64,000 nt of DNA from Auanema rhodensis (taxonomy: Eukaryota; Animalia; Nematoda): the NCBI GenBank assembly GCA_964057225.1, contig OZ059898.1, positions 14,818,001 through 14,882,000 on the forward strand. The letters run 5' to 3'. Under the pieces are notes generated by a model. It searched no databases, was not told where the DNA came from, and worked only from the letters and a program-made list of their open reading frames with translations. A program made the translations under genes and the position numbers. Positions 1 through 64,000 of this stretch are shown here, one piece after another. How positions within the stretch are numbered: position 1 is the first letter of the stretch; each line of letters starts with the position of its first letter.

Positions 1-147
1 ATTTACCTCGAGGAAGTGAGTAAGCAACAAGGGAAGTAACAACGATGAATCGGCCCCGTATTAACTTCTAACAAAAAGATTAAACGCAGAAAAGAGATTT
101 AGAAGAGAGCTGAATTCAAAATATGGAAATTCAGAAGAGAAGATGCC

Positions 148-151
148 AAAA
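148..151 (-). terminator. Pol III T4 terminator downstream of each tRNA copy (representative)
   Basis: Minus strand 3' trailer GCCATC-TTTT, 6 nt after the discriminator base. Present in essentially every unit, with more T4-6 runs further downstream. Confidence 0.8.
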
Positions 152-157
152 GATGGC

Positions 158-229
158 TTCCCATGCCGGGAATCGAACCCGGGCCGCGTGGGTGAAAACC
201 ACGAATCCTAACCACTAGACCACATGGGA
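158..229 (-). tRNA. tRNA-Glu-TTC: tRNA-Glu(UUC), first copy, representative of about 171 full-length copies
   Basis: Minus strand reads TCCCATGTGGTCTAGTGGTTAGGATTCGTGGTTTTCACCCACGCGGCCCGGGTTCGATTCCCGGCATGGGAA (72 nt). Acceptor stem TCCCATG/CATGGGA, anticodon arm CGTGG-TT-TTC-AC-CCACG, T arm CCGGG-TTCGATT-CCCGG, A box TGGTCTAGTGG, B box GGTTCGATTCC. No encoded CCA. Confidence 0.98.
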
Positions 230-3200
230 CACGTTAACTGTTCTTATGATACTACTTCTTCTATCATTTACCTCGAGGAAGTGAGTAAGCAACAAGGGAA
301 GTAACAACGATGAATCGGCCCCGTATTAACTTCTAACAAAAAGATTAAATGCAGAAAAGAGATTTAGAAGAGAGCTGAATTCAAAATATGAAAATTCAAA
401 AGAGAAGATGCCAAAAGATGGCTTCCCATGCCGGGAATCGAACCCGGGCTGCGTGGGTGAAAACCACGAATCCTAACCACTAGACCACATGGGACACGTT
501 AACTGTTCTTAGGATACTACTTCTTCTATCATTTACCTCGAGGAAGTGAGTAAGCAACAAGGGAAGTAACAACGATGAATCGGCCCCGTATTAACTTCTA
601 ACAAAACGGTTAAAAGCAGAAAAGAGATTTAGAAGAGAGCTGAATTCAAAATATGGAAATTCAGAAGAGAAGATGCCAAAAGATGGCTTCCCATGCCGGG
701 AATCGAACCCGGGCCGCGTGGGTGAAAACCACGAATCCTAACCACTAGACCACATGGGACACGTTAACTGCTCTTATGATACTACTTCTTCTATCATTTA
801 CCTCGAGGAAGTGAGTAAGCAACAAGGGAAGTAACAACGATGAATCGGCCCCGTATTAACTTCTAACAAAAAGATTAAACGCAGAAAAGAGATTTAGAAG
901 AGAGCTGAATTCAAAATATGGAAATTCAGAAGAGAAGATGCCAAAAGATGGCTTCCCATGCCGGGAATCGAACCCGGGCCGCGTGGGTGAAAACCACGAA
1001 TCCTAACCACTAGACCACATGGGACACGTTAACTGTTCTTAGGATACTACTTCTTCTATCATTTACCTCGAGGAAGTGAGTAAGCAACAAGGGAAGTAAC
1101 AACGATGAATCGGCCCCGTATTAACTTCTAACAAAAAGATTAAACGCAGAAAAGAGATTTAGAAGAGAGCTGAATTCAAAATATGGAAATTCAGAAGAGA
1201 AGATGCCAAAAGATGGCTTCCCATGCCGGGAATCGAACCCGGGCCGCGTGGGTGAAAACCACGAATCCTAACCACTAGACCACATGGGACACGTTAACTG
1301 TTCTTATGATACTACTTCTTCTATCATTTACCTCGAGGAAGTGAGTAAGCAACAAGGGAAGTAACAACGATGAATCGGCCCCGTATTAACTTCTAACAAA
1401 AAGATTAAATGCAGAAAAGAGATTTAGAAGAGAGCTGAATTCAAAATATGAAAATTCAAAAGAGAAGATGCCAAAAGATGGCTTCCCATGCCGGGAATCG
1501 AACCCGGGCCGCGTGGGTGAAAACCACGAATCCTAACCACTAGACCACATGGGACACGTTAACTGTTCTTAGGATACTACTTCTTCTATCATTTACCTCG
1601 AGGAAGTGAGTAAGCAACAAGGGAAGTAACAACGATGAATCGGCCCCGTATTAACTTCTAACAAAACAGTTAAAAGCAGAAAAGAGATTTAGAAGAGAGC
1701 TGAATTCAAAATATGAAAATTCAAAAGAGAAGATGCCAAAAGATGGCTTCCCATGCCGGGAATCGAACCCGGGCCGCGTGGGTGAAAACCACGAATCCTA
1801 ACCACTAGACCACATGGGACACGTTAACTGCTCTTATGATACTACTTCTTCTATCATTTACCTCGAGGAAGTGAGTAAGCAACAAGGGAAGTAACAACGA
1901 TGAATCGGCCCCGTATTAACTTCTAACAAAAAGATTAAATGCAGAAAAGAGATTTAGAAGAGAGCTGAATTCATAATATGGAAATTCAGAAGAGAAGATG
2001 CCAAAAGATGGCTTCCCATGCCGGGAATCGAACCCGGGCCGCGTGGGTGAAAACCACGAATCCTAACCACTAGACCACATGGGACACGTTAACTGTTCTT
2101 ATGATACTACTTCTTCTATCATTTACCTCGAGGAAGTGAGTAAGCAACAAGGGAAGTAACAATGATGAATTGGTCCCGTATTAACTTCTAACAAAACGAT
2201 TAAATGCAGAAAAGAGATTTAGAAGAGAGCTGAATTCAAAATATGGAAATTCAGAAGAGAAGATGCCAAAAGATGGCTTCCCATGCCGGGAATCGAACCC
2301 GGGCCGCGTGGGTGAAAACCACGAATCCTAACCACTAGACCACATGGGACACGTTAACTGTTCTTATGATACTACTTCTTCTATCATTTACCTCGAGGAA
2401 GTGAGTAAGCAACAAGGGAAGTAACAATGATGAATTGGTCCCGTATTAACTTCTGACAAAAAGATTAAATGCAGAAAAGAGATTTAGAAGAGAGCTGAAT
2501 TCAAAATATGGAAATTCAGAAGAGAAGATGCCAAAAGATGGCTTCCCATGCCGGGAATCGAACCCGGGCCGCGTGGGTGAAAACCACGAATCCTAACCAC
2601 TAGACCACATGGGACACGTTAACTGCTCTTATGATACTACTTCTTCTATCATTTACCTCGAGGAAGTGAGTAAGCAACAAGGGAAGTAACAATGATGAAT
2701 TGGTCCCGTATTAACTTCTGACAAAAAGATTAAATGCAGAAAAGAGATTTAGAAGAGAGCTGAATTCAAAATATGGAAATTCAGAAGAGAAGATGCCAAA
2801 AGATGGCTTCCCATGCCGGGAATCGAACCCGGGCCGCGTGGGTGAAAACCACGAATCCTAACCACTAGACCACATGGGACACGTTAACTGCTCTTATGAT
2901 ACTACTTCTTCTATCATTTACCTCGAGGAAGTGAGTAAGCAACAAGGGAAGTAACAACGATGAATCGGCCCCGTATTAACTTCTAACAAAAAGATTAAAC
3001 GCAGAAAAGAGATTTAGAAGAGAGCTGAATTCAAAATATGGAAATTCAGAAGAGAAGATGCCAAAAGATGGCTTCCCATGCCGGGAATCGAACCCGGGCC
3101 GCGTGGGTGAAAACCACGAATCCTAACCACTAGACCACATGGGACACGTTAACTGTTCTTATGATACTACTTCTTCTATCATTTACCTCGAGGAAGTGAG

Positions 3201-6200
3201 TAAGCAACAAGGGAAGTAACAACGATGAATCGGCCCCGTATTAACTTCTAACAAAAAGATTAAATGCAGAAAAGAGATTTAGAAGAGAGCTGAATTCAAA
3301 ATATGAAAATTCAAAAGAGAAGATGCCAAAAGATGGCTTCCCATGCCGGGAATCGAACCCGGGCCGCGTGGGTGAAAACCACGAATCCTAACCACTAGAC
3401 CACATGGGACACGTTAACTGTTCTTAGGATACTACTTCTTCTATCATTTACCTCGAGGAAGTGAGTAAGCAACAAGGGAAGTAACAACGATGAATCGGCC
3501 CCGTATTAACTTCTAACAAAACGGTTAAAAGCAGAAAAGAGATTTAGAAGAGAGCTGAATTCAAAATATGGAAATTCAGAAGAGAAGATGCCAAAAGATG
3601 GCTTCCCATGCCGGGAATCGAACCCGGGCCGCGTGGGTGAAAACCACGAATCCTAACCACTAGACCACATGGGACACGTTAACTGCTCTTATGATACTAC
3701 TTCTTCTATCATTTACCTCGAGGAAGTGAGTAAGCAACAAGGGAAGTAACAACGATGAATCGGCCCCGTATTAACTTCTAACAAAAAGATTAAACGCAGA
3801 AAAGAGATTTAGAAGAGAGCTGAATTCAAAATATGGAAATTCAGAAGAGAAGATGCCAAAAGATGGCTTCCCATGCCGGGAATCGAACCCGGGCCGCGTG
3901 GGTGAAAACCACGAATCCTAACCACTAGACCACATGGGACACGTTAACTGTTCTTATGATACTACTTCTTCTATCATTTACCTCGAGGAAGTGAGTAAGC
4001 AACAAGGGAAGTAACAACGATGAATCGGCCCCGTATTAACTTCTAACAAAAAGATTAAATGCAGAAAAGAGATTTAGAAGAGAGCTGAATTCAAAATATG
4101 AAAATTCAAAAGAGAAGATGCCAAAAGATGGCTTCCCATGCCGGGAATCGAACCCGGGCCGCGTGGGTGAAAACCACGAATCCTAACCACTAGACCACAT
4201 GGGACACGTTAACTGTTCTTAGGATACTACTTCTTCTATCATTTACCTCGAGGAAGTGAGTAAGCAACAAGGGAAGTAACAACGATGAATCGGCCCCGTA
4301 TTAACTTCTAACAAAACAGTTAAAAGCAGAAAAGAGATTTAGAAGAGAGCTGAATTCAAAATATGAAAATTCAAAAGAGAAGATGCCAAAAGATGGCTTC
4401 CCATGCCGGGAATCGAACCCGGGCCGCGTGGGTGAAAACCACGAATCCTAACCACTAGACCACATGGGACACGTTAACTGCTCTTATGATACTACTTCTT
4501 CTATCATTTACCTCGAGGAAGTGAGTAAGCAACAAGGGAAGTAACAACGATGAATCGGCCCCGTATTAACTTCTAACAAAAAGATTAAATGCAGAAAAGA
4601 GATTTAGAAGAGAGCTGAATTCATAATATGGAAATTCAGAAGAGAAGATGCCAAAAGATGGCTTCCCATGCCGGGAATCGAACCCGGGCCGCGTGGGTGA
4701 AAACCACGAATCCTAACCACTAGACCACATGGGACACGTTAACTGTTCTTATGATACTACTTCTTCTATCATTTACCTCGAGGAAGTGAGTAAGCAACAA
4801 GGGAAGTAACAACGATGAATCGGCCCCGTATTAACTTCTAACAAAAAGATTAAATGCAGAAAAGAGATTTAGAAGAGAGCTGAATTCAAATAATGAAAAT
4901 TCAAAAGAGAAGATGCCAAAAGATGGCTTCCCATGCCGGGAATCGAACCCGGGCCGCGTGGGTGAAAACCACGAATCCTAACCACTAGACCACATGGGAC
5001 ACGTTAACTGTTCTTATGATACTACTTCTTCTATAATTTACCTCGAGGAAGTGAGTAAGCAACAAGGGAAGTAACAACGATGAATCGGCCCCGTATTAAC
5101 TTCTAACAAAACGGTTAAAAGCAGAAAAGAGATTTAGAAGAGAGCTGAATTCAAAATATGAAAATTCAAAAGAGAAGATGCCAAAAGATGGCTTCCCATG
5201 CCGGGAATCGAACCCGGGCCGCGTGGGTGAAAACCACGAATCCTAACCACTAGACCACATGGGACACGTTAACTGTTCTTATGATACTACTTCTTCTATC
5301 ATTTACCTCGAGGAAGTGAGTAAGCAACAAGGGAAGTAACAACGATGAATCGGCCCCGTATTAACTTCTAACAAAAAGATTAAATGCAGAAAAGAGATTT
5401 AGAAGAGAGCTGAATTCAAAATATGAAAATTCAAAAGAGAAGATGCCAAAAGATGGCTTCCCATGCCGGGAATCGAACCCGGGCCGCGTGGGTGAAAACC
5501 ACGAATCCTAACCACTAGACCACATGGGACACGTTAACTGTTCTTAGGATACTACTTCTTCTATCATTTACCTCGAGGAAGTGAGTAAGCAACAAGGGAA
5601 GTAACAACGATGAATCGGCCCCGTATTAACTTCTAACAAAACAGTTAAAAGCAGAAAAGAGATTTAGAAGAGAGCTGAATTCAAAATATGAAAATTCAAA
5701 AGAGAAGATGCCAAAAGATGGCTTCCCATGCCGGGAATCGAACCCGGGCCGCGTGGGTGAAAACCACGAATCCTAACCACTAGACCACATGGGACACGTT
5801 AACTGCTCTTATGATACTACTTCTTCTATCATTTACCTCGAGGAAGTGAGTAAGCAACAAGGGAAGTAACAACGATGAATCGGCCCCGTATTAACTTCTA
5901 ACAAAAAGATTAAATGCAGAAAAGAGATTTAGAAGAGAGCTGAATTCATAATATGGAAATTCAGAAGAGAAGATGCCAAAAGATGGCTTCCCATGCCGGG
6001 AATCGAACCCGGGCCGCGTGGGTGAAAACCACGAATCCTAACCACTAGACCACATGGGACACGTTAACTGTTCTTATGATACTACTTCTTCTATCATTTA
6101 CCTCGAGGAAGTGAGTAAGCAACAAGGGAAGTAACAACGATGAATCGGCCCCGTATTAACTTCTAACAAAAAGATTAAATGCAGAAAAGAGATTTAGAAG

Positions 6201-6805
6201 AGAGCTGAATTCAAATAATGAAAATTCAAAAGAGAAGATGCCAAAAGATGGCTTCCCATGCCGGGAATCGAACCCGGGCCGCGTGGGTGAAAACCACGAA
6301 TCCTAACCACTAGACCACATGGGACACGTTAACTGTTCTTATGATACTACTTCTTCTATAATTTACCTCGAGGAAGTGAGTAAGCAACAAGGGAAGTAAC
6401 AACGATGAATCGGCCCCGTATTAACTTCTAACAAAACGGTTAAAAGCAGAAAAGAGATTTAGAAGAGAGCTGAATTCAAAATATGAAAATTCAAAAGAGA
6501 AGATGCCAAAAGATGGCTTCCCATGCCGGGAATCGAACCCGGGCCGCGTGGGTGAAAACCACGAATCCTAACCACTAGACCACATGGGACACGTTAACTG
6601 CTCTTATGATACTACTTCTTCTATCATTTACCTCGAGGAAGTGAGTAAGCAACAAGGGAAGTAACAACGATGAATCGGCCCCGTATTAACTTCTAACAAA
6701 AAGATTAAATGCAGAAAAGAGATTTAGAAGAGAGCTGAATTCAAAATATGGAAATTCAGAAGAGAAGATGCCAAAAGATGGCTTCCCATGCCGGGAATCG
6801 AACCC

Positions 6806-6829
6806 GGGTCTGAGACGTTTCGTCGTCTC
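6806..6829. repeat. MULE left TIR
   Basis: GGGTCTGAGACGTTTCGTCGTCTC. Matches the reverse complement of 9406-9429 (GGGTGGCGGACGTTTCGTCGTCTC) at 20/24, with a perfect 16-bp inner core. Confidence 0.9.
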
Positions 6830-7053
6830 CTATTTTTACAACCTCTCCCAAGCAAGCCTAACGGTCGTAAATTATACCACACGTGTTGTACTCTCAGTTT
6901 TTGGTCGTTTAGACTTCTAAAAATTACCCAAAAACTTAAACAGTTCATAAAAAATCAAGGTTTCTAATCTAAACGGCAAGGAGGTTTTTGTGTTAGAAAA
7001 AAAAGATATGGTTCAAAAAATTTATTAGAGTTTAGTTTTTCGAGTTAAATGAT

Positions 7054-9081
7054 TCAAAAATAAGATTTTCTGGTGTTAAACTTCGCCATCTCCTCGACAT
7101 ATGCTATTATTTCTTCTTGATTAGGCAGTCGGTTATTGGAGATGCTCCTAAAGTTTTCAAACTGAACCTCAATCCGTTGTTGCCTCTCAATTACGTTTTT
7201 TCTTTTTTTCCTGGCAGGCTCAACATTCGATGACAAAGCGATCAGGACATGATTAGCCATCAAATTTTCACCATGAAAAAAAGTAATTAATTCAGAAAGA
7301 GGAGGATGAGAGCAAGATAAAATAGTCTTCATTTTACGGTGAAAAGATTCAACATTATTAGATGTACGAAACTGTTTTATGTCCCATTTGCTCCAATAAT
7401 GTCGCAAAGGTCCTTCAATCCATGTTTCATTCACATAACTGATCATTTGAAGACAAGAAGAATATGATGGATGATCAGAAGAAACGGGAGAATTGAGTAA
7501 CCCGGACCGTGAGATAAGATCAGTTTGAAGGAAGAGCAAGCCCAGCAGCCGACCATGCCATTGTTTGATTTCAATGGATTGTTTCTCTGCTTGTGTCAAA
7601 CCCAGTTGAAGAAACCGTCTGTTCAAGCTCTGAGCATAATGAAATGCACATCCTTGAACAGAATTAAAAATAGTTTCAGCTTCCCTTATTACAGCGATCT
7701 CAAAATCACAGATAAAAATAAGGTTTTCAACTATGCAACCAACGTTGGAGAGAGCTAGTGCAATATGTTGAAGAAGCCTTCTATAAGTGAACCTACTCTT
7801 ATTTTTCAAAATGGAATAGAAAAGAGGTACAGTTGTTCCATTTCTGCAACCGCCCATGATGGTATATGTTTGTTCCATATCCAAAGGCTGGTATTTGAAA
7901 CAACCGTCCCCAAGCAAATGAGTTAAACCATTCTGAACAGCTAGTTCCAAACAAAATGTATCAAAATACAAATGAAACTCGCTGTCATGAAAATGCAAGA
8001 ACGTACGACCATTGATAGTTTTAGACAAAGACAGAGGAACATTGGTCATGGATGTTCTTAAGTCTTTACGAGAACTTAAAGCCCTTGTAATAGCTCTACG
8101 TCTACTATCATAGCCACCATGAAACCAAGCAGAGGAAACTTCTTGCTTTTCATGCTCTTCTAACTCAGATTCATGAAATATTTTTTTTATTTCATTGACA
8201 AATAACGAATAAGCTTTCATCTCAAAACATGAGTCTGAACTTTTGATATTCTGAGTTAGAGAGTATGTGATATTTTTGCATTTGTTAATAGAAAACAAAA
8301 ATGGATCACAATGATGGTTTTGAGCAACAGGATTTTCGAGAAATACATTATTTTCTACTTTGATAGAAGTGTATTTACCCAAATGTTTACAACCCGTGCA
8401 ACGATAAATAGAATAAGTTTTTTGAGAACTTTTACTACTGAATTGGTAGCGATACAGCAAGTTTTCAAATTTATATTCTAAACAGGGGTGTACACCCTGC
8501 TTAGAAGGCGCAATGAGAGCGGCGTATGAGTTAGGATTTGCAGATTGCGAAGAAAATGAAGAAGAAGGAGAGGGAACAGAAGAAGAAGGAGAGGGAACAG
8601 AAGAAGAAGGAGAGAGAACAGGTAAAGAAGGAGAGGAAACAGAAGGAGGAGAAGAAGAAAGAGAAGATGACAGTGAAGAATGAACGGCAGAAGAAGAAGA
8701 AGAAGAAGGCTGAATAGAAAGATGTGAAGTAGAAGAAGAGAACAGTGGAGCGCTGTTGACAGTAGGAACAGTAACTGTAGCAACAGATTCAACTGAAGAA
8801 GATGCCGCAGATGAATTTGCTAGAGAAAGAGCAGAAGCAAAATTAACATTTTGCTGCCTCAATGGAGGGATATTGAAAGATGGAAGAGTGAAATTCAAAA
8901 ATGAGAGTGAAGTTACATCATTTGAATAAACTTCAAGATTCTGAGTATTTACCGAAGAATTATTAAAAAAGATAGTTATGTTCTCCGAAGGAACATTATC
9001 AAAAGGCTGAGAAACAAGAACAAATTTACCCTGAGCGTTAATCATCAGAGAAAATGGACAGAAAGTAGAAGGAAAAATCAT
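7054..9081 (-). CDS. MULE transposase: Ser/Pro-rich N-terminus, FLYWCH/WRKY-like Zn-binding domain, DDE catalytic domain. The true start may involve an upstream exon.
   Basis: 675-aa ORF. YRCTGC...NHHC Zn motif. Catalytic motifs LLGDGCF (D1), ICDFE (D2), GCAFH (CxxH) and RTSNNVESFH (E), all typical of MULE transposases. Confidence 0.92.
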   Translation of the reverse strand: MIFPSTFCPFSLMINAQGKFVLVSQPFDNVPSENITIFFNNSSVNTQNLEVYSNDVTSLSFLNFTLPSFNIPPLRQQNVNFASALSLANSSAASSSVESVATVTVPTVNSAPLFSSSTSHLSIQPSSSSSSAVHSSLSSSLSSSPPSVSSPSLPVLSPSSSVPSPSSSVPSPSSSFSSQSANPNSYAALIAPSKQGVHPCLEYKFENLLYRYQFSSKSSQKTYSIYRCTGCKHLGKYTSIKVENNVFLENPVAQNHHCDPFLFSINKCKNITYSLTQNIKSSDSCFEMKAYSLFVNEIKKIFHESELEEHEKQEVSSAWFHGGYDSRRRAITRALSSRKDLRTSMTNVPLSLSKTINGRTFLHFHDSEFHLYFDTFCLELAVQNGLTHLLGDGCFKYQPLDMEQTYTIMGGCRNGTTVPLFYSILKNKSRFTYRRLLQHIALALSNVGCIVENLIFICDFEIAVIREAETIFNSVQGCAFHYAQSLNRRFLQLGLTQAEKQSIEIKQWHGRLLGLLFLQTDLISRSGLLNSPVSSDHPSYSSCLQMISYVNETWIEGPLRHYWSKWDIKQFRTSNNVESFHRKMKTILSCSHPPLSELITFFHGENLMANHVLIALSSNVEPARKKRKNVIERQQRIEVQFENFRSISNNRLPNQEEIIAYVEEMAKFNTRKSYF
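8555..8715 (-). repeat. Low-complexity GAA-rich coding repeat, including a 21-bp unit encoding SSSVPSP
   Basis: gaagaaggagagggaacagaa repeated about 3 times, plus (gaa)n runs. Encodes the poly-Ser/Pro tract of the transposase. Confidence 0.8.
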
Positions 9082-9405
9082 GATGAACGAGAAAAGATGA
9101 GAAAGTGTGAATAAGCAAACTTATCGAAAGAAAAGATAAACTAACAACTATTACAATGAACTCACGTAACTGTTGACTTGAAACTGTTTGATGATAGCCT
9201 GGTTGATAGAACTGTATGTTTATTTTAATTTCTGCTTTTTTCAATTTATAATTTGATGGCACTTCAAGGTATGTAGCCACTTATATCTGACTTCTATAGA
9301 TTTATAGCTTTAATAGCACCCCGAGTTACATGAACACTGACACTTGTCAGCACATTATCATAAAGTTTGCCCTCTAATGATCAGCCTGAACTAGTTCACA
9401 AACTA

Positions 9406-9429
9406 GAGACGACGAAACGTCCGCCACCC
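9406..9429. repeat. MULE right TIR
   Basis: GAGACGACGAAACGTCCGCCACCC, the inverted counterpart of 6806-6829. Confidence 0.9.
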
Positions 9430-12400: not shown

Positions 12401-12895
12401 GACACGTTAACTGTTCTTATGATACTACTTCATCTATCATTTACCTCGAGGAAGTGAGTAAGCAACAAGAGAAGTAACAATGATGAATTGGTCCCGTATT
12501 AACTTCTAACAAAAAGATTAAATACAGAAAAGAGATTTAGAAGAGAGCTGAATTCAAAATATGGAAATTCAGAAGAGAAGATGCCAAAAGATGGCTTCCC
12601 ATGCCGGGAATCGAACCCGGGCCGCGTGGGTGAAAACCACGAATCCTAACCACTAGACCACATGGGACACGTTAACTGTTCTTATGATACTACTTCTTCT
12701 ATCATTTATCTCGAGGAAGTGAGTAAGCAACAAGGGAAGTAACAACGATGAATCGGCCCCGTATTATCTTCTAACAAAACGATTAAATGCAGAAAAGAGA
12801 TTTAGAAGAGAGCTGAATTCAAAATATGGAAATTCAGAAGAGAAGATGCCAAAAGATGGCTTTCCATGCCGGGAATCGAACCCGGGCCGCGTGGG
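9430..12895 (-). repeat. tRNA-Glu(UUC) array, segment 2 (12 full genes at 9681+265n)
   Basis: Same 265-bp unit. tRNA starts at 9681 ... 12596, with a split copy at 12861. Confidence 0.98.
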
Positions 12896-13232
12896 CGTTC
12901 CGTTATGCTCTCACATCGATCCTATAGACCAATAAAGCCTACAAGATGAGTGTGATAGTATTCCAGATGTAGCGGTAGATAAAGAGCATAATGGATAAAC
13001 ATAAGACTCGAGAAAGAAAGGTTTATTATGTCTACATGATTACAATAAGTTATATAAGTCTACATAAAGATATAAAGTGAAAGAGAGCTAAGAAAGGAAG
13101 ACCAACCATCCATAGTCATTCCATAAGGCAAAGCTGAAGTCTGTGTTCCATATGAAGGGCGTGTCGTCCTCTCTCAGCCTCATGTCGTCTGATTCTAATC
13201 CGCCTGCTACGTATTGATTTCCGACTGGAACG
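12896..13232 (-). repeat. 3' LTR of the non-autonomous element
   Basis: CGTTCC...GGAACG, 337 bp, direct repeat of 15804-16140. Minus-strand AATAAA at 13022-13027 and TATATAA near 13049-13055. Confidence 0.92.
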
Positions 13233-13246
13233 TGCCATTTTTTTCG
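13233..13246 (-). other. Putative polypurine tract
   Basis: Minus strand CGAAAAAAATGGCA directly precedes the 3' LTR. Confidence 0.5.
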
Positions 13247-39121: not shown

Positions 39122-39127
39122 AGTATA

Positions 39128-50564: not shown

Positions 50565-50565
50565 G

Positions 50566-53500: not shown

Positions 53501-56500
53501 GAAGAGAGCTGAATTCAAAATATGGAAATTCAGAAGAGAAGATGCCAAAAGATGGCTTCCCATGCCGGGAATCGAACCCGGGCCGCGTGGGTGAAAACCA
53601 CGAATCCTAACCACTAGACCACATGGGACACGTTAACTGTCCTTATGATACTACTTCTTCTATCATTTACCTGAAGGAAGTGAGTAAACAACAAGGAAAG
53701 TAACAACGATGAATCGGACCCGTATTAACTTCTAACAAAACGATTAAATGCAGAAAAGAGATTTAGAAGAGAGCTGAATTCAAAATATGGAAATTGAGAA
53801 GAGAAGATGCCAAAAGATGGCTTCCCATGCCGGGAATCGAACCCGGGCCGCGTGGGTGAAAACCACGAATCCTAACCACTAGACCACATGGGACACGTTA
53901 ACTGTTCTTATGATACTACTTCTTCTATCATTTACCTCGAGGAAGTGAGTAAGCAACAAGGGAAGTAACAACGATGAATCGGCCCCGTATTAACTTCTCA
54001 CAAAACGATTAAATGCAGAAAAGAGATTTAGAAGAGAGCTGAATTCAAAATATGGAAATTGAGAAGAGAAGATGCCAAAAGATGGCTTCCCATGCCGGGA
54101 ATCGAACCCGGGCCGCGTGGGTGAAAACCACGAATCCTAACCACTAGACCACATGGGACACTTTAACTGTTCTTATGATACTACTTCTTCTATCATTTAC
54201 CTCAAGGAAGTGAGTAAGCAACAAGGGAAGTAACAACGATGAATCGGCCCCGTATTAACTTCTAACAAAACGATTAAAAGCAGAAAAGAGATTTAGAAGA
54301 GAGTTGATTTCAAAATATGGAAATTCAGAAGAGAAGATGCCAAAAGATGGCTTCCCATGCCGGGAATCGAACCCGGGCCGCGTGGGTGAAAACCACGAAT
54401 CCTAACCACTAGACCACATTGGACACGTTAACTGTTCTTATGATACTACTTCTTCTATCATTTATCTCGAGGAAGTGAGTAAGCAACAAGGGAAGTAACA
54501 ACGATGAATCGGCCCCGTATTAACTTCTAACAAAACGATTAAAAGCAGAAAAGAGATTTAGAAGAGAGTTGATTTCAAAATATGGAAATTCAGAAGAGAA
54601 GATGCCAAAAGATGGCTTCCCATGCCGGGAATCGAACCCGGGCCGCGTGGGTGAAAACCACGAATCCTAACCACTAGACCACATGGGACACGTTAACTGT
54701 TCTAATGATACTACTTCTTCTATCATTTACCTGAAGGAAGTGAGTAAACAACAAGGGAAGTAACAACGATGAATCGGCCCCGTATTAACTTCTAACAAAA
54801 CGATTAAAAGCAGAAAAGAGATTTAGAAGAGAGCTGAATTCAAAATATGGAAATTGAGAAGAGAAGATGCCAAAAGATGGCTTCCCATGCCGGGAATCGA
54901 ACCCGGGCCGCGTGGGTGAAAACCACGAATCCTAACCACTAGACCACATGGGACACGTTAACTGTTCTTATGATACTACTTCTTCTATCATTTACCTCGA
55001 GGAAGTGAGTAAGCAACAAGGGAAGTAACAACGATGAATCGGCCCCGTATTAACTTCTAACAAAACGATTAAATGCAGAAAAGAGATTTAGAAGAGAGCT
55101 GAATTCAAAATATGGAAATTGAGAAGAGAAGATGCCAAAAGATGGCTTCCCATGCCGGGAATCGAACCCGGGCCGCGTGGGTGAAAACCACGAATCCTAA
55201 CCACTAGACCACATGGGACACGTTAACTGTTCTTATGATACTACTTCTTCTATCATTTACCTCGAGGAAGTGAGTAAGCAACAAGGGAAGTAACAACGAT
55301 GAATCGGCCCCGTATTAACTTCTAACAAAACGATTAAATGCAGAAAAGAGATTTAGAAGAGAGCTGAATTCAAAATATGGAAATTGAGAAGAGAAGATGC
55401 CAAAAGATGGCTTCCCATGCCGGGAATCGAACCCGGGCCGCGTGGGTGAAAACCACGAATCCTAACCACTAGACCACATGGGACACGTTAACTGTTCTTA
55501 TGATACTACTTCTTCTATCATTTACCTCGAGGAAGTGAGTAAGCAACAAGGGAAGTAACAACGATGAATCGGACCCGTATTAACTTCTAACAAAACGATT
55601 AAATGCAGAAAAGAGATTTAGAAGAGAGCTGAATTCAAAATATGGAAATTGAGAAGAGAAGATGCCAAAAGATGGCTTCCCATGCCGGGAATCGAACCCG
55701 GGCCGCGTGGGTGAAAACCACGAATCCTAACCACTAGACCACATGGGACACGTTAACTGTTCTAATGATACTACTTCTTCTATCATTTACCTGAAGGAAG
55801 TGAGTAAACAACAAGGGAAGTAACAACGATGAATCGGCCCCGTATTAACTTCTAACAAAACGATTAAAAGCAGAAAAGAGATTTAGAAGAGAGCTGAATT
55901 CAAAATATGGAAATTGAGAAGAGAAGATGCCAAAAGATGGCTTCCCATGCCGGGAATCGAACCCGGGCCGCGTGGGTGAAAACCACGAATCCTAACCACT
56001 AGACCACATGGGACACGTTAACTGTCCTTATGATACTACTTCTTCTATCATTTACCTGAAGGAAGTGAGTAAACAACAAGGAAAGTAACAACGATGAATC
56101 GGACCCGTATTAACTTCTAACAAAACGATTAAATGCAGAAAAGAGATTTAGAAGAGAGCTGAATTCAAAATATGGAAATTGAGAAGAGAAGATGCCAAAA
56201 GATGGCTTCCCATGCCGGGAATCGAACCCGGGCCGCGTGGGTGAAAACCACGAATCCTAACCACTAGACCACATGGGACACGTTAACTGTTCTTATGATA
56301 CTACTTCTTCTATCATTTACCTCGAGGAAGTGAGTAAGCAACAAGGGAAGTAACAACGATGAATCGGCCCCGTATTAACTTCTAACAAAACGATTAAATG
56401 CAGAAAAGAGATTTAGAAGAGAGCTGAATTCAAAATATGGAAATTGAGAAGAGAAGATGCCAAAAGATGGCTTCCCATGCCGGGAATCGAACCCGGGCCG

Positions 56501-59500
56501 CGTGGGTGAAAACCACGAATCCTAACCACTAGACCACATGGGACACTTTAACTGTTCTTATGATACTACTTCTTCTATCATTTACCTCAAGGAAGTGAGT
56601 AAGCAACAAGGGAAGTAACAACGATGAATCGGCCCCGTATTAACTTCTAACAAAACGATTAAAAGCAGAAAAGAGATTTAGAAGAGAGTTGATTTCAAAA
56701 TATGGAAATTCAGAAGAGAAGATGCCAAAAGATGGCTTCCCATGCCGGGAATCGAACCCGGGCCGCGTGGGTGAAAACCACGAATCCTAACCACTAGACC
56801 ACATTGGACACGTTAACTGTTCTTATGATACTACTTCTTCTATCATTTATCTCGAGGAAGTGAGTAAGCAACAAGGGAAGTAACAACGACGAATCGGCCC
56901 CGTATTAACTTCTAACAAAACGATTAAAAGCAGAAAAGAGATTTAGAAGAGAGTTGATTTCAAAATATGGAAATTCAGAAGAGAAGATGCCAAAAGATGG
57001 CTTCCCATGCCGGGAATCGAACCCGGGCCGCGTGGGTGAAAACCACGAATCCTAACCACTAGACCACATGGGACACGTTAACTGTTCTAATGATACTACT
57101 TCTTCTATCATTTACCTGAAGGAAGTGAGTAAACAACAAGGAAAGTAACAACGATGAATCGGCCCCGTATTAACTTCTAACAAAACGATTAAAAGCAGAA
57201 AAGAGATTTAGAAGAGAGTTGATTTCAAAATATGGAAATTCAGAAGAGAAGATGCCAAAAGATGGCTTCCCATGCCGGGAATCGAACCCGGGCCGCGTGG
57301 GTGAAAACCACGAATCCTAACCACTAGACCACATGGGACACGTTAACTGTTCTTATGATACTACTTCTTCTATCATTTACCTCGAGGAAGTGAGTAAGCA
57401 ACAAGGGAAGTAACAACGATGAATCGGCCCCGTATTAACTTCTCACAAAACGATTAAATGCAGAAAAGAGATTTAGAAGAGAGCTGAATTCAAAATATGG
57501 AAATTGAGAAGAGAAGATGCCAAAAGATGGCTTCCCATGCCGGGAATCGAACCCGGGCCGCGTGGGTGAAAACCACGAATCCTAACCACTAGACCACATG
57601 GGACACTTTAACTGTTCTTATGATACTACTTCTTCTATCATTTACCTCAAGGAAGTGAGTAAGCAACAAGGGAAGTAACAACGATGAATCGGCCCCGTAT
57701 TAACTTCTAACAAAACGATTAAAAGCAGAAAAGAGATTTAGAAGAGAGTTGATTTCAAAATATGGAAATTCAGAAGAGAAGATGCCAAAAGATGGCTTCC
57801 CATGCCGGGAATCGAACCCGGGCCGCGTGGGTGAAAACCACGAATCCTAACCACTAGACCACATTGGACACGTTAACTGTTCTTATGATACTACTTCTTC
57901 TATCATTTATCTCGAGGAAGTGAGTAAGCAACAAGGGAAGTAACAACGATGAATCGGCCCCGTATTAACTTCTAACAAAACGATTAAAAGCAGAAAAGAG
58001 ATTTAGAAGAGAGCTGAATTCAAAATATGGAAATTGAGAAGAGAAGATGCCAAAAGATGGCTTCCCATGCCGGGAATCGAACCCGGGCCGCGTGGGTGAA
58101 AACCACGAATCCTAACCACTAGACCACATGGGACACTTTAACTGTTCTTATGATACTACTTCTTCTATCATTTACCTCAAGGAAGTGAGTAAGCAACAAG
58201 GGAAGTAACAACGATGAATCGGCCCCGTATTAACTTCTAACAAAACGATTAAAAGCAGAAAAGAGATTTAGAAGAGAGTTGATTTCAAAATATGGAAATT
58301 CAGAAGAGAAGATGCCAAAAGATGGCTTCCCATGCCGGGAATCGAACCCGGGCCGCGTGGGTGAAAACCACGAATCCTAACCACTAGACCACATTGGACA
58401 CGTTAACTGTTCTTATGATACTACTTCTTCTATCATTTATCTCGAGGAAGTGAGTAAGCAACAAGGGAAGTAACAACGATGAATCGGCCCCGTATTAACT
58501 TCTAACAAAACGATTAAAAGCAGAAAAGAGATTTAGAAGAGAGCTGAATTCAAAATATGGAAATTGAGAAGAGAAGATGCCAAAAGATGGCTTCCCATGC
58601 CGGGAATCGAACCCGGGCCGCGTGGGTGAAAACCACGAATCCTAACCACTAGACCACATTGGACACGTTAACTGTTCTTATGATACTACTTCTTCTATCA
58701 TTTATCTCGAGGAAGTGAGTAAGCAACAAGGGAAGTAACAACGATGAATCGGCCCCGTATTAACTTCTAACAAAACGATTAAATGCAGAAAAGAGATTTA
58801 GAAGAGAGCTGAATTCAAAATATGGAAATTGAGAAGAGAAGATGCCAAAAGATGGCTTCCCATGCCGGGAATCGAACCCGGGCCGCGTGGGTGAAAACCA
58901 CGAATCCTAACCACTAGACCACATGGGACACGTTAACTGTTCTTATGATACTACTTCTTCTATCATTTACCTCGAGGAAGTGAGTAAGCAACAAGGGAAG
59001 TAACAACGATGAATCGGCCCCGTATTAACTTCTCACAAAACGATTAAATGCAGAAAAGAGATTTAGAAGAGAGCTGAATTCAAAATATGGAAATTGAGAA
59101 GAGAAGATGCCAAAAGATGGCTTCCCATGCCGGGAATCGAACCCGGGCCGCGTGGGTGAAAACCACGAATCCTAACCACTAGACCACATGGGACACTTTA
59201 ACTGTTCTTATGATACTACTTCTTCTATCATTTACCTCAAGGAAGTGAGTAAGCAACAAGGGAAGTAACAACGATGAATCGGCCCCGTATTAACTTCTAA
59301 CAAAACGATTAAAAGCAGAAAAGAGATTTAGAAGAGAGTTGATTTCAAAATATGGAAATTCAGAAGAGAAGATGCCAAAAGATGGCTTCCCATGCCGGGA
59401 ATCGAACCCGGGCCGCGTGGGTGAAAACCACGAATCCTAACCACTAGACCACATGGGACACGTTAACTGTCCTTATGATACTACTTCTTCTATCATTTAC

Positions 59501-62500
59501 CTGAAGGAAGTGAGTAAACAACAAGGAAAGTAACAACGATGAATCGGCCCCGTATTAACTTCTAACAAAACGATTAAATGCAGAAAAGAGATTTAGAAGA
59601 GAGCTGAATTCAAAATATGGAAATTGAGAAGAGAAGATGCCAAAAGATGGCTTCCCATGCCGGGAATCGAACCCGGGCCGCGTGGGTGAAAACCACGAAT
59701 CCTAACCACTAGACCACATGGGACACGTTAACTGTTCTTATGATACTACTTCTTCTATCATTTACCTCGAGGAAGTGAGTAAGCAACAAGGGAAGTAACA
59801 ACGATGAATCGGCCCCGTATTAACTTCTAACAAAACGATTAAATGCAGAAAAGAGATTTAGAAGAGAGCTGAATTCAAAATATGGAAATTCAGAAGAGAA
59901 GATGCCAAACGATGGCTTCCCATGCCGGGAATCGAACCCGGGCCGCGTGGGTGAAAACCACGAATCCTAACCACTAGACCACATGGGACACGTTAACTGT
60001 CCTTATGATACTACTTCTTCTATCATTTACCTGAAGGAAGTGAGTAAACAACAAGGAAAGTAACAACGATGAATCGGACCCGTATTAACTTCTAACAAAA
60101 CGATTAAATGCAGAAAAGAGATTTAGAAGAGAGCTGAATTCAAAATATGGAAATTGAGAAGAGAAGATGCCAAAAGATGGCTTCCCATGCCGGGAATCGA
60201 ACCCGGGCCGCGTGGGTGAAAACCACGAATCCTAACCACTAGACCACATGGGACACTTTAACTGTTCTTATGATACTACTTCTTCTATCATTTACCTCAA
60301 GGAAGTGAGTAAGCAACAAGGGAAGTAACAACGATGAATCGGCCCCGTATTAACTTCTAACAAAACGATTAAAAGCAGAAAAGAGATTTAGAAGAGAGTT
60401 GATTTCAAAATATGGAAATTCAGAAGAGAAGATGCCAAAAGATGGCTTCCCATGCCGGGAATCGAACCCGGGCCGCGTGGGTGAAAACCACGAATCCTAA
60501 CCACTAGACCACATGGGACACGTTAACTGTTCTAATGATACTACTTCTTCTATCATTTACCTGAAGGAAGTGAGTAAACAACAAGGGAAGTAACAACGAT
60601 GAATCGGCCCCGTATTAACTTCTAACAAAACGATTAAAAGCAGAAAAGAGATTTAGAAGAGAGCTGAATTCAAAATATGGAAATTGAGAAGAGAAGATGC
60701 CAAAAGATGGCTTCCCATGCCGGGAATCGAACCCGGGCCGCGTGGGTGAAAACCACGAATCCTAACCACTAGACCACATGGGACACGTTAACTGTTCTAA
60801 TGATACTACTTCTTCTATCATTTACCTGAAGGAAGTGAGTAAACAACAAGGGAAGTAACAACGATGAATCGGCCCCGTATTAACTTCTAACAAAACGATT
60901 AAAAGCAGAAAAGAGATTTAGAAGAGAGCTGAATTCAAAATATGGAAATTGAGAAGAGAAGATGCCAAAAGATGGCTTCCCATGCCGGGAATCGAACCCG
61001 GGCCGCGTGGGTGAAAACCACGAATCCTAACCACTAGACCACATGGGACACGTTAACTGTCCTTATGATACTACTTCTTCTATCATTTACCTGAAGGAAG
61101 TGAGTAAACAACAAGGAAAGTAACAACGATGAATCGGCCCCGTATTAACTTCTAACAAAACGATTAAATGCAGAAAAGAGATTTAGAAGAGAGCTGAATT
61201 CAAAATATGGAAATTGAGAAGAGAAGATGCCAAAAGATGGCTTCCCATGCCGGGAATCGAACCCGGGCCGCGTGGGTGAAAACCACGAATCCTAACCACT
61301 AGACCACATGGGACACGTTAACTGTTCTTATGATACTACTTCTTCTATCATTTACCTCGAGGAAGTGAGTAAGCAACAAGGGAAGTAACAACGATGAATC
61401 GGCCCCGTATTAACTTCTAACAAAACGATTAAATGCAGAAAAGAGATTTAGAAGAGAGCTGAATTCAAAATATGGAAATTGAGAAGAGAAGATGCCAAAA
61501 GATGGCTTCCCATGCCGGGAATCGAACCCGGGCCGCGTGGGTGAAAACCACGAATCCTAACCACTAGACCACATGGGACACGTTAACTGTTCTTATGATA
61601 CTACTTCTTCTATCATTTACCTCGAGGAAGTGAGTAAGCAACAAGGGAAGTAACAACGATGAATCGGCCCCGTATTAACTTCTAACAAAACGATTAAATG
61701 CAGAAAAGAGATTTAGAAGAGAGCTGAATTCAAAATATGGAAATTGAGAAGAGAAGATGCCAAAAGATGGCTTCCCATGCCGGGAATCGAACCCGGGCCG
61801 CGTGGGTGAAAACCACGAATCCTAACCACTAGACCACATGGGACACGTTAACTGTTCTTATGATACTACTTCTTCTATCATTTACCTCGAGGAAGTGAGT
61901 AAGCAACAAGGGAAGTAACAACGATGAATCGGACCCGTATTAACTTCTAACAAAACGATTAAATGCAGAAAAGAGATTTAGAAGAGAGCTGAATTCAAAA
62001 TATGGAAATTGAGAAGAGAAGATGCCAAAAGATGGCTTCCCATGCCGGGAATCGAACCCGGGCCGCGTGGGTGAAAACCACGAATCCTAACCACTAGACC
62101 ACATGGGACACGTTAACTGTTCTAATGATACTACTTCTTCTATCATTTACCTGAAGGAAGTGAGTAAACAACAAGGGAAGTAACAACGATGAATCGGCCC
62201 CGTATTAACTTCTAACAAAACGATTAAATGCAGAAAAGAGATTTAGAAGAGAGCTGAATTCAAAATATGGAAATTGAGAAGAGAAGATGCCAAAAGATGG
62301 CTTCCCATGCCGGGAATCGAACCCGGGCCGCGTGGGTGAAAACCACGAATCCTAACCACTAGACCACATGGGACACGTTAACTGTTCTTATGATACTACT
62401 TCTTCTATCATTTACCTCGAGGAAGTGAGTAAGCAACAAGGGAAGTAACAACGATGAATCGGCCCCGTATTAACTTCTAACAAAACGATTAAATGCAGAA

Positions 62501-64000
62501 AAGAGATTTAGAAGAGAGCTGAATTCAAAATATGGAAATTGAGAAGAGAAGATGCCAAAAGATGGCTTCCCATGCCGGGAATCGAACCCGGGCCGCGTGG
62601 GTGAAAACCACGAATCCTAACCACTAGACCACATGGGACACGTTAACTGTTCTTATGATACTACTTCTTCTATCATTTACCTCGAGGAAGTGAGTAAGCA
62701 ACAAGGGAAGTAACAACGATGAATCGGACCCGTATTAACTTCTAACAAAACGATTAAATGCAGAAAAGAGATTTAGAAGAGAGCTGAATTCAAAATATGG
62801 AAATTGAGAAGAGAAGATGCCAAAAGATGGCTTCCCATGCCGGGAATCGAACCCGGGCCGCGTGGGTGAAAACCACGAATCCTAACCACTAGACCACATG
62901 GGACACGTTAACTGTTCTAATGATACTACTTCTTCTATCATTTACCTGAAGGAAGTGAGTAAACAACAAGGGAAGTAACAACGATGAATCGGCCCCGTAT
63001 TAACTTCTAACAAAACGATTAAAAGCAGAAAAGAGATTTAGAAGAGAGCTGAATTCAAAATATGGAAATTGAGAAGAGAAGATGCCAAAAGATGGCTTCC
63101 CATGCCGGGAATCGAACCCGGGCCGCGTGGGTGAAAACCACGAATCCTAACCACTAGACCACATGGGACACGTTAACTGTCCTTATGATACTACTTCTTC
63201 TATCATTTACCTGAAGGAAGTGAGTAAACAACAAGGAAAGTAACAACGATGAATCGGACCCGTATTAACTTCTAACAAAACGATTAAATGCAGAAAAGAG
63301 ATTTAGAAGAGAGCTGAATTCAAAATATGGAAATTGAGAAGAGAAGATGCCAAAAGATGGCTTCCCATGCCGGGAATCGAACCCGGGCCGCGTGGGTGAA
63401 AACCACGAATCCTAACCACTAGACCACATGGGACACGTTAACTGTTCTTATGATACTACTTCTTCTATCATTTACCTCGAGGAAGTGAGTAAGCAACAAG
63501 GGAAGTAACAACGATGAATCGGCCCCGTATTAACTTCTAACAAAACGATTAAATGCAGAAAAGAGATTTAGAAGAGAGCTGAATTCAAAATATGGAAATT
63601 GAGAAGAGAAGATGCCAAAAGATGGCTTCCCATGCCGGGAATCGAACCCGGGCCGCGTGGGTGAAAACCACGAATCCTAACCACTAGACCACATGGGACA
63701 CTTTAACTGTTCTTATGATACTACTTCTTCTATCATTTACCTCAAGGAAGTGAGTAAGCAACAAGGGAAGTAACAACGATGAATCGGCCCCGTATTAACT
63801 TCTAACAAAACGATTAAAAGCAGAAAAGAGATTTAGAAGAGAGTTGATTTCAAAATATGGAAATTCAGAAGAGAAGATGCCAAAAGATGGCTTCCCATGC
63901 CGGGAATCGAACCCGGGCCGCGTGGGTGAAAACCACGAATCCTAACCACTAGACCACATTGGACACGTTAACTGTTCTTATGATACTACTTCTTCTATCA
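50566..64000 (-). repeat. tRNA-Glu(UUC) array, segment 4 (51 full genes at 50642+265n), continuing beyond the window
   Basis: Same unit. First tRNA 50642-50713, last 63892-63963. Confidence 0.98.

What the first reader, a model, noticed from the sequence alone, without database searches (positions are those of the whole stretch)
1..64000. Satellite-scale array of intact tRNA-Glu(UUC) genes (>=173 copies, unbounded on both sides)
Seen: a 265-bp unit with one complete Pol III gene (A box, B box, T4 terminator), all on one strand. The 72-bp gene is much more invariant than the spacer, which has many segregating variants. Known: tandem tRNA arrays exist (e.g. Entamoeba tRNA-STR arrays), but >170 copies of one isodecoder far exceeds usual translational need. 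Inference: the array may work as a structural chromosomal element (TFIIIC/condensin platform, boundary, centromere- or pairing-like satellite) or as a source of tRNA-Glu fragments, while still being selected for tRNA or promoter integrity.
Basis: partly seen in the sequence, partly recalled or inferred. Interest (0 to 1): 0.75.

Follow-up and report, generated by a model that had tools for sequence, protein, structure and literature searches.

The report
Long tandem tRNA-Glu gene array, nematode
The window holds a real head-to-tail array of about 173 copies of one glutamate tRNA gene, probably from a strongylid-type roundworm, whose gene bodies are kept far more uniform than the spacers; giant single-tRNA arrays have already been reported in a strongylid, so it is a new example of a known oddity.

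Summary
Observation confirmed, with corrections. A 265-bp unit carrying one tRNA-Glu(UUC) gene on the minus strand fills 45.8 kb (72%) of the window. There are 171 intact genes and 2 genes split by transposons. The array runs off both window ends.

149 genes are identical. 18 carry one acceptor-stem mismatch (C4A), and 4 carry other single changes. Variable sites number 4 of 72 in the gene against 51 of 193 in the spacer (p=7e-5). The deficit also holds outside the A and B promoter boxes (4/50, p=0.004). That points to constraint on the tRNA itself, not only on TFIIIC binding.

Recurring multi-unit blocks show growth by unequal crossing-over. The retroelement polymerase nests among strongylid nematode sequences.

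A strongylid, Nippostrongylus brasiliensis, is already reported to have ~150-copy tRNA-Trp and ~90-copy tRNA-Ser arrays and 7,800-10,900 predicted tRNA genes.

Best reading: an amplified, selection-maintained Pol III gene array. The structural-element and tRNA-fragment ideas remain untested.

The parts
1..6808 (-). Array segment A: 25 intact tRNA-Glu(UUC) genes in 265-bp units. It ends with the 3' 26 nt of a gene split by insertion 1.
158..229 (-). Example gene (main sequence, 149 copies). A-box region at 212-222, B box at 169-179, anticodon UUC.
   Evidence: 64.1 bits, full cloverleaf
148..151 (-). TTTT Pol III terminator, 7-10 nt after the 3' end of the example gene. The same run is intact in 170/171 copies.
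6809..9429 (-). Insertion 1: MULE-like DNA transposon inside the T arm of a tRNA gene. Perfect 16-bp terminal inverted repeat at 6814-6829 / 9406-9421. Target-site duplication ATCGAACCC(GGG), 9-12 bp. 675-aa ORF at 7054-9081.
   Evidence: (PF10551 MULE, 26.1 bits, just under the 27.6 cut-off)
9430..12895 (-). Array segment B: 12 intact genes, bounded by the two halves of split genes.
12896..16138 (.). Insertion 2: 3.2-kb LTR element without recognisable pol, inside a tRNA gene (variable-region/anticodon-stem side). 335-bp LTRs at 12896-13230 and 15804-16138 with 3 mismatches (99.1%). Target duplication within CGTGGG.
   Evidence: Pfam blank for the 154-aa ORF
16139..38255 (-). Array segment C: 83 intact genes. 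It includes two 298-bp units with a 33-bp duplication (18454-18519 and 19017-19082).
38256..50569 (-). Insertion 3: 12.3-kb block starting 13 nt upstream of a tRNA gene. It holds a BEL/Pao retrovirus-like element with one uninterrupted 2958-aa gag-pol-env ORF (39259-48135). No LTR pair was found. The array phase jumps from 85 to 193 across the block.
   Evidence: (Peptidase_A17 1e-38, Phlebovirus_G2 3e-63, integrase, RT)
50570..64000 (-). Array segment D: 51 intact genes. It shares unit haplotype blocks with segment C.

Best explanation
This is a genuine, very long tandem array of RNA polymerase III tRNA-Glu(UUC) genes in the nuclear genome of a nematode, most likely a strongylid or close relative.

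Origin and growth: one tRNA gene with its 193-bp flank was amplified head to tail. The array grows, shrinks and is homogenised by unequal crossing-over and multi-unit segmental duplication.

Selection: variants arise everywhere in the unit. Those that alter the 72-nt tRNA body rarely spread, because copies that make a defective tRNA are selected against once they reach appreciable frequency.

Function: the array is therefore best read as an amplified gene battery, like 5S rDNA or spliced-leader arrays. It supplies, or can supply, tRNA for GAA codons. It is one instance of a lineage-wide habit of amplifying tRNA genes.

Shown versus inferred: the anatomy, the polymorphism pattern and the block duplications are shown. 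Transcription, the share of cellular tRNA-Glu that comes from the array, and the host species are inferred.
For: - 171 intact genes with a full cloverleaf, matching B box, A-box region and TTTT terminator.
- There is no encoded CCA: the gene is followed by GCCATC.
- Variable columns number 4/72 in the gene against 51/193 in the spacer, p=7.5e-5.
- The gene is the least variable 72-bp window of the unit. Spacer variation resumes at -4 and +2.
- The depletion holds outside the promoter boxes: 4/50, p=0.004.
- The deficit lies in variants that have spread. For variants in 3 or more copies it is 1 gene column against 34 spacer columns. Rare variants differ less: 3/72 against 19/193, p=0.21.
- The gene is G+C-richer than the spacer (58% against 37%), so it is not an obvious mutational cold spot.
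- 67 distinct unit sequences occur among 165 full units. Blocks of 4-7 units recur, including on both sides of insertion 3.
- The longest exact internal repeat is only 1,581 bp.
- Three transposon insertions are present; two of them have clean target duplications.
- The retroelement pol nests inside a strongylid clade, SH-aLRT 98-99.
- Precedent exists in N. brasiliensis: ~150 copies of a ~200-bp tRNA-Trp unit and 90 copies of a tRNA-Ser unit (PMC5765664), and 7,853-10,882 predicted tRNA genes (PMC13455165).
- GAA is the most used codon of the 2958-aa ORF.
- Part of the tRNA matches a filarial tRNA-Glu(UUC) fragment at 34 of 36 positions (PMC6903752; compared by eye).
Against: - No expression, Pol III occupancy or read-depth data could be consulted.
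- Selection on any one of ~170 copies must be very weak, so the constraint has to act at the level of variant spread.
- A defective-looking variant (C4A, which breaks the C4-G69 pair) has nevertheless reached 18 copies (10.5%) from a single origin.
- Two genes are destroyed by transposons and remain in place.
- Tandem tRNA clusters in Arabidopsis are largely silenced (PMC12308677, abstract), so an intact promoter does not prove activity.
- The host is inferred only from a mobile element at ~40% protein identity.
- The genome-wide tRNA complement of the source organism is unknown.
Confidence: 0.6

Rival explanations
1. Essentially selfish or neutral satellite DNA that happens to be seeded by a tRNA gene. 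The array is mostly silent and contributes little tRNA. The gene region is uniform for reasons other than selection on this array's product, for example ectopic gene conversion from dispersed tRNA-Glu genes that share only the 72-nt gene.
For: - The organisation is satellite-like, with higher-order blocks.
- Transposons accumulate, and split genes are not purged.
- The C4A mismatch variant has reached 10.5%.
- Rare variants are not significantly fewer in the gene.
- Silenced tandem tRNA clusters are known in Arabidopsis (PMC12308677), and a 92-kb tRNA satellite is known in maize (PMC10335936).
Against: - The low-variation zone coincides with the gene borders to within 2-4 nt.
- All 171 unsplit copies keep cloverleaf scores far above threshold. 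The lowest score displayed was 56.4 bits against a threshold of 29; the C4A copies were not shown.
- The terminator is intact in 170/171 copies.
- Ectopic conversion is possible but would have to be frequent across 170 copies.
Confidence: 0.2
2. One reading: the array works mainly as a chromosomal architecture element, with dense TFIIIC/Pol III sites acting as a condensin platform, boundary, or pairing- or centromere-like element. tRNA output is secondary.
For: - One B box every 265 bp over more than 45 kb would be an exceptional TFIIIC-site density.
- A human tRNA tandem repeat has been proposed as a boundary element (PMC4041453, abstract).
- Nothing in the sequence excludes this role in addition to tRNA supply.
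Against: - Constraint is not limited to the A and B boxes. The other 50 gene positions are also depleted of variants (4/50 against 51/193, p=0.004), which a pure TFIIIC platform would not need.
- Arrays of other tRNAs in a strongylid suggest a general amplification process rather than a dedicated element.
- No chromatin data are available.
Confidence: 0.08
3. The array exists to produce large amounts of tRNA-Glu-derived small RNAs (halves or fragments), for example for secretion by a parasite.
For: A filarial nematode releases abundant 5' tRNA fragments, with tRNA-Glu(UUC) among the listed species (PMC6903752). High copy number would give high output.
Against: - In that study tRNA-Glu(UUC) is only 14th in the published table of abundant fragments.
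- Arrays of Trp and Ser genes in a strongylid argue against a Glu-specific fragment role.
- The whole tRNA body is constrained, not one half.
Confidence: 0.04
4. Assembly artefact: a shorter array was over-expanded or mis-joined by the assembler.
For: - Tandem arrays are error-prone in assembly.
- The phase jump across insertion 3 (85 to 193), together with the missing LTRs, could mark a mis-join.
Against: - 67 distinct unit sequences occur in a non-periodic order.
- No exact internal repeat is longer than 1,581 bp, so long accurate reads can be placed uniquely.
- There is no indel noise in the 265-bp spacing.
- Two transposon insertions have target-site duplications.
Confidence: 0.03

Closest known systems
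Very long tandem repeats of single tRNA genes ('VeCTRs') in the strongylid nematode Nippostrongylus brasiliensis (Eccles et al. 2018, PMC5765664)
   Same: - Head-to-tail units of a few hundred bp.
- Each unit holds one conserved tRNA gene plus a species-specific spacer.
- About 90-150 copies per array.
- The phylogenetic neighbourhood agrees: the window's retroelement pol nests among strongylid sequences.
- N. brasiliensis assemblies are reported with 7,853-10,882 tRNA genes (PMC13455165).
   Different: - The reported arrays are tRNA-Trp (~200-bp unit) and tRNA-Ser (80-bp spacer), not tRNA-Glu(UUC) with a 193-bp spacer.
- The source species of this window is not identified.
- That paper gives no gene-versus-spacer polymorphism analysis and does not describe transposon insertions in the arrays (as far as searches show).
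5S rDNA / SL1 tandem arrays of nematodes
   Same: A tandem battery of a small Pol III (or Pol II) RNA gene, homogenised by unequal exchange, with the gene conserved and the spacer variable. This is what the array works like.
   Different: The gene is different. Those arrays are universal and known to be essential and transcribed; expression of this array is not shown. (The comparison rests on established knowledge plus the mention.)
Entamoeba tRNA gene arrays (PMC2652664)
   Same: tRNA genes organised in long tandem arrays that make up a noticeable part of the genome. A structural role has been speculated.
   Different: Entamoeba units hold up to 5 different tRNA genes, with microsatellite-like short tandem repeats between them (abstract). 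Here each unit holds one gene, and no short tandem repeat occurs in the spacer. The hosts are unrelated.
Plant tandem tRNA clusters and tRNA satellite: Arabidopsis Ser/Tyr, Pro and Cys clusters; maize tRNASAT 92-kb array (PMC12308677, PMC10701932, PMC10335936)
   Same: Tandemly repeated tRNA gene units of a few hundred bp, in tens to hundreds of copies.
   Different: The plant clusters lie in heterochromatin and are mostly silenced. No chromatin information exists here. The origins are independent.
Human 1q23.3 tRNA variable-number tandem repeat (PMC4041453)
   Same: A copy-number-variable tandem repeat that carries tRNA genes and has been proposed as a boundary element.
   Different: It has a 7.3-kb unit, 9-43 copies and a CTCF-binding motif. 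Here the unit is 265 bp, a single gene repeats more than 170 times, and nematodes are generally held to lack CTCF (own knowledge).

Membership tests
Eukaryotic nuclear (type 2 Pol III) tRNA gene | Cloverleaf fold and tRNA covariance score above threshold, with a defined anticodon | tested here: met
   ARAGORN finds 171 tRNA-Glu(ttc) genes. Rfam RF00005 gives 64.1 bits for the main sequence and 56.4 for a C62A copy, against a threshold of 29.
Eukaryotic nuclear (type 2 Pol III) tRNA gene | Internal A box (TRGCNNAGTGG) and B box (GGTTCGANTCC) | tested here: met
   The B box GGTTCGATTCC is exact. The A-box region TGGTCTAGTGG differs from the textbook consensus at one position. Both were read, and no variant falls in either box in any of the 171 copies. 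The consensus strings are from my own knowledge.
Eukaryotic nuclear (type 2 Pol III) tRNA gene | Run of four or more T shortly downstream; 3' CCA not encoded | tested here: met
   The trailer GCCATCTTTTGGC occurs in 170/171 copies, and one copy has GTTT. The gene is followed by GCC, not CCA.
Eukaryotic nuclear (type 2 Pol III) tRNA gene | Transcribed, processed and aminoacylated | not testable with these tools
   No RNA or ChIP data are available. The polymorphism pattern is only indirect evidence.
Strongylid-type giant single-tRNA tandem array (Eccles et al. 2018) | One tRNA gene plus a lineage-specific spacer per short unit, head to tail, about 100 or more copies | tested here: met
   265-bp unit, 171 intact and 2 split copies, one strand. 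No match to the unit or to the gene's 3' 43 nt in metagenome contigs.
Strongylid-type giant single-tRNA tandem array (Eccles et al. 2018) | Host is a strongylid nematode | tested here: inconclusive
   The only evidence is a mobile element. Best pol hits are 37-41% identical to Cylicocyclus, Haemonchus, Ancylostoma and Necator. In the tree the window's pol sits inside the strongylid clade, SH-aLRT 98-99. The tree used 28 named hits chosen from 120. No host gene lies in the window.
Classical satellite DNA | Long tandem array with higher-order or block structure and concerted evolution | tested here: met
   67 unit haplotypes with recurring 4-7-unit blocks. Mean difference between units is 5-7 of 265 nt.
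Classical satellite DNA | Non-genic monomer evolving without gene-type constraint | tested here: not met
   The monomer holds a complete gene whose 72 nt are the least variable part of the unit.
Entamoeba-type tRNA/STR arrays | Short tandem repeats between genes; often several different tRNA genes per unit | tested here: not met
   TRF reports no short-period repeat inside the unit. Each unit has one gene.
tRNA-derived SINE | Dispersed copies with tRNA-related head, tail and target-site duplications | tested here: not met
   Copies are strictly head to tail at 265 bp, without flanking duplications or A-rich tails. The tRNA part is a full gene, not a degenerate head.

The most novel reading that the evidence does not exclude
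The array is a dedicated chromosomal element of a holocentric nematode. It would be a >45-kb block with a TFIIIC/Pol III site every 265 bp that organises chromatin (condensin loading, a domain boundary, nuclear-pore or nucleolar tethering, or a germline-specific or eliminated region). The tRNA body would be kept intact because transcription through a foldable, processable product is needed for that role. This would make giant tRNA arrays a new class of functional satellite in strongylids.
Probability: 0.08. Interest if true: 0.75.

Novelty: new member of a known kind. Interest (0 to 1): 0.4.

Why it matters
Giant single-tRNA arrays are a poorly studied feature that long-read assemblies are only now exposing in strongylid nematodes, a group that includes major parasites of livestock and people. 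This window adds a tRNA-Glu(UUC) example.

To my knowledge from the papers searched, it also gives the first internal evidence that such an array is under gene-type constraint: the variant deficit is confined to the 72-nt gene and extends beyond the promoter boxes.

The array offers natural markers that would let a simple tRNA-sequencing experiment measure whether, and how much, it is expressed. These markers are the C4A isodecoder at 10.5% of copies and the leader and trailer variants.

If the arrays are active, they bear on how tRNA supply, codon usage and Pol III load evolve. If they are silent, they are a clean animal counterpart to the silenced plant tRNA clusters.

Tried and rejected
- **MULE-like ORF.** Two word searches (whole protein, and residues 195-675) found no relatives.
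- **Metagenome scans.** Two scans found nothing. One used the trailer-gene junction (39 nt) and one the 3' 43 nt of the gene.
- **Other collections.** Bacterial/archaeal genome, viral, phage, plasmid and E. coli collections were not searched, because the locus is eukaryotic.
- **Second RNA gene in the spacer.** Rejected. A permissive Rfam scan of three units found only tRNA. The spacer folds no better than shuffles on either strand, z = -0.03 and +0.28.
- **Coding potential of the array.** Rejected. Only mechanical 70-aa GTG ORFs occur.
- **tRNA-targeted transposition.** Considered because all three insertions lie in or within 13 nt of a gene. With three events this is not significant: about 0.06 by my own arithmetic (102/265 cubed).
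- **LTRs of the BEL/Pao element.** Searched at two stringencies and by blastn; none found.
- **Transcription-associated mutation signature in the flanks.** There are too few sites to test.
- **Literature.** Searches for a described tRNA-Glu array in nematodes found only the N. brasiliensis Trp and Ser arrays.
Full report
**1. What is in the window**

Tandem Repeats Finder reports a 265-bp period over 1-38255 and 50566-64000. ARAGORN finds 171 tRNA-Glu genes with anticodon UUC, all on the minus strand. Rfam's tRNA model finds the same 171, the main sequence scoring 64.1 bits against a gathering score of 29.

A Hamming scan with the 72-nt gene finds no copy on the plus strand. It also finds one further, truncated copy. 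The array runs into both ends of the window.

The gene has these features:
- a perfect B box (GGTTCGATTCC);
- an A-box region reading TGGTCTAGTGG;
- no encoded CCA;
- a TTTT run 7-10 nt after its 3' end, intact in 170 of 171 copies.

**2.

The array is interrupted three times. Together the insertions take 18,178 bp, or 28% of the window. What remains is 45.8 kb, equal to 172.9 units.

*Insertion 1 (6809-9429).* It sits inside the T arm of a gene.
- It has a perfect 16-bp terminal inverted repeat and a 9-12-bp target duplication, ATCGAACCC(GGG).
- Its 675-aa ORF has a weak MULE transposase match, 26.1 bits against a cut-off of 27.6.
- Two word searches found no relatives of that ORF.

*Insertion 2 (12896-16138).* It also splits a gene.
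- It carries 335-bp LTRs that differ at 3 positions.
- No polymerase was recognised in it.

*Insertion 3 (38256-50569).* It begins 13 nt upstream of a gene.
- It contains a BEL/Pao retrovirus-like element with one uninterrupted 2958-aa gag-pol-env reading frame. That frame includes a phlebovirus-G2-type envelope domain.
- No LTR pair was found.
- The array register jumps from phase 85 to phase 193 across it. So a deletion, a rearrangement or a mis-join accompanied it.

Two units are 298 bp long because of a 33-bp duplication.

I only describe the retroelement.

**3. Variation**

Among the 171 intact genes:

| Sequence | Copies | Effect |
|---|---|---|
| Main sequence | 149 | - |
| C4A | 18 | breaks the C4-G69 acceptor pair |
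| C62A | 2 | breaks a T-stem pair; 56.4 bits |
| G45A | 1 | - |
| G22T | 1 | - |

All C4A copies with a full unit (17 of the 18) carry the same linked spacer variant, so the change arose once and spread.

Across 165 full units, variable columns compare as follows:

| Class of variant | Gene (72 columns) | Spacer (193 columns) | Fisher p |
|---|---|---|---|
| All variable columns | 4 | 51 | 7.5e-5 |
| In 3-8 copies | 0 | 13 | 0.023 |
| In 9 or more copies | 1 | 21 | 0.011 |
| Rare (1-2 copies) | 3 | 19 | 0.21 |

- The gene is the least variable 72-bp window of the circularised unit. No window wholly inside the spacer has fewer than 17 variable columns. Variation resumes at -4 and +2.
- The gene is G+C-richer than the spacer, 58% against 37%.

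The contrast between spread and rare variants is what one expects if new mutations arise everywhere but gene variants are hindered from spreading.

**4. tRNA constraint or promoter constraint**

If the array mattered only as a TFIIIC platform, only the 22 box positions would need to stay fixed.

The 50 gene positions outside the boxes have 4 variable columns, against 51 of 193 in the spacer (p=0.004). Constraint therefore covers the whole tRNA body. That favours selection on a functional tRNA, or at least on a foldable and processable transcript, over a purely architectural role.

**5. How the array evolves, and whether it is an artefact**

- There are 67 distinct unit sequences among the 165 full units.
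- Blocks of 4-7 units recur nearby and at a distance, including on both sides of insertion 3. This is the signature of unequal crossing-over and segmental duplication.
- The longest exact internal repeat is 1,581 bp, so accurate long reads can be placed uniquely.
- Two of the transposon insertions have clean target duplications.

An assembly over-expansion is therefore unlikely. It cannot be excluded without reads.

**6. Nothing else is hidden in the unit**

- A permissive Rfam scan of three units finds only tRNA.
- The spacer folds no better than shuffled sequence on either strand.
- There is no meaningful ORF.
- The stretch -21 to -40 upstream of the gene and the 13-nt trailer are the least diverse parts of the spacer, with nucleotide diversity 0.003 and 0.006 against about 0.04 elsewhere. 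This would fit upstream and terminator elements, but it was not tested further.

**7. Source organism**

The window holds no host protein gene.
- The best relatives of the retroelement polymerase are from strongylid nematodes (Cylicocyclus, Haemonchus, Ancylostoma, Necator) at 37-41% identity. Caenorhabditis follows at about 31-33% and arthropods at 27-31%.
- In a maximum-likelihood tree the window's sequence sits inside the strongylid clade, SH-aLRT 98-99. The tree used 28 named hits chosen from 120; unnamed metagenome rows and near-duplicates were left out.
- A published filarial tRNA-Glu(UUC) fragment matches the gene at 34 of 36 positions, by my eye (PMC6903752).

The window is thus most likely from a strongylid or closely related rhabditid nematode. 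It is not human sequence.

**8. Comparison with what is known**

- Eccles et al. [quoted passage not shown] One array has close to 150 copies of a ~200-bp unit with tRNA-Trp. Another has 90 copies of tRNA-Ser with an 80-bp spacer. The authors noted that C. elegans has nothing comparable.
- A 2026 paper lists 7,853 and 10,882 predicted tRNA genes in two N. brasiliensis assemblies (PMC13455165).
- Maize has a 92-kb tRNA satellite (PMC10335936).
- Arabidopsis has tandem tRNA clusters that are mostly silenced (PMC12308677).
- Entamoeba has multi-gene arrays containing short tandem repeats (PMC2652664).
- Humans have a 7.3-kb tRNA repeat proposed as a boundary element (PMC4041453).

The present array fits the strongylid type in anatomy. 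It fails the Entamoeba type, because it has no short tandem repeats and only one gene per unit. It is not a SINE. It behaves like 5S rDNA in its evolution.

**9. Verdict**

The array is real and large, and its gene bodies are under constraint. It is best explained as an amplified Pol III gene battery maintained by unequal exchange plus selection against the spread of defective tRNA variants, in a lineage where such amplification is already documented.

'Far exceeds translational need' is not established:
- GAA is the commonest codon of the one long ORF here, 33.5 per thousand and 2.75 times GAG. This is transposon codon usage, so it is only a hint.
- By my own recollection, GAA is also the most used codon in C. 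elegans.

The structural and tRNA-fragment readings are neither supported nor excluded. The box/non-box test weighs against a purely structural role.

Novelty is modest: a new isoacceptor example of a known kind, with a useful internal polymorphism analysis and natural markers for an expression test.

Noticed in passing
window 38256-50569 (ORF 39259-48135, minus strand): BEL/Pao retrovirus-like element with a single uninterrupted 2958-aa gag-pol-env frame, including a Phlebovirus-G2-type envelope domain. No LTR pair was detectable, and the tRNA array register shifts from phase 85 to 193 across the block. This suggests a deletion, a rearrangement or a mis-join.
   Followed up: partly
window 38613-39258 (minus strand), e.g. 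ORF 38702-39121: Short ORFs with CCHC zinc-knuckle-like motifs lie downstream of the envelope end of the big ORF. They have no Pfam hit. They may be a fragment of a second retroelement's gag, which could explain the missing LTR.
   Followed up: no
window 6809-9429 (ORF 7054-9081, minus strand): The MULE-like transposon's 675-aa protein has a Ser-rich N-terminal half and only a sub-threshold MULE match. Two word searches found no relatives. It appears to be an orphan transposase lineage. It is inserted in the tRNA T arm with a 9-12-bp target duplication.
   Followed up: partly
window 12896-16138: Small LTR element with 335-bp LTRs that are 99.1% identical, which implies a recent insertion. No recognisable pol was found, only a 154-aa ORF without family hits. 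It is probably a non-autonomous element.
   Followed up: partly
window 18454-18519 and 19017-19082: The same 33-bp duplication in the 3'-trailer side of the spacer occurs in two units that lie two units apart, giving 298-bp units. This is a small example of a variant copied by a two-unit duplication.
   Followed up: no
every unit; e.g. window 250-269 (-21 to -40 upstream of the gene at 158-229): The stretch AAATGATAGAAGAAGTAGTA, 21-40 nt upstream of the tRNA, is almost invariant (diversity 0.003 against about 0.04 in the rest of the spacer). So is the 13-nt trailer with the T run. It may be an upstream Pol III control element.
   Followed up: no
window 19621-63963 (18 genes, listed): The C4A variant breaks an acceptor-stem pair and arose once. 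It is scattered through the right two-thirds of the array and absent from the first 19.6 kb. It is a natural marker for measuring the array's expression.
   Followed up: yes
window 50551-50580: At the right junction of insertion 3 the motif GCAGAAAA occurs twice in tandem where the array resumes. It has no counterpart at the left junction, so it is not a simple target-site duplication.
   Followed up: no
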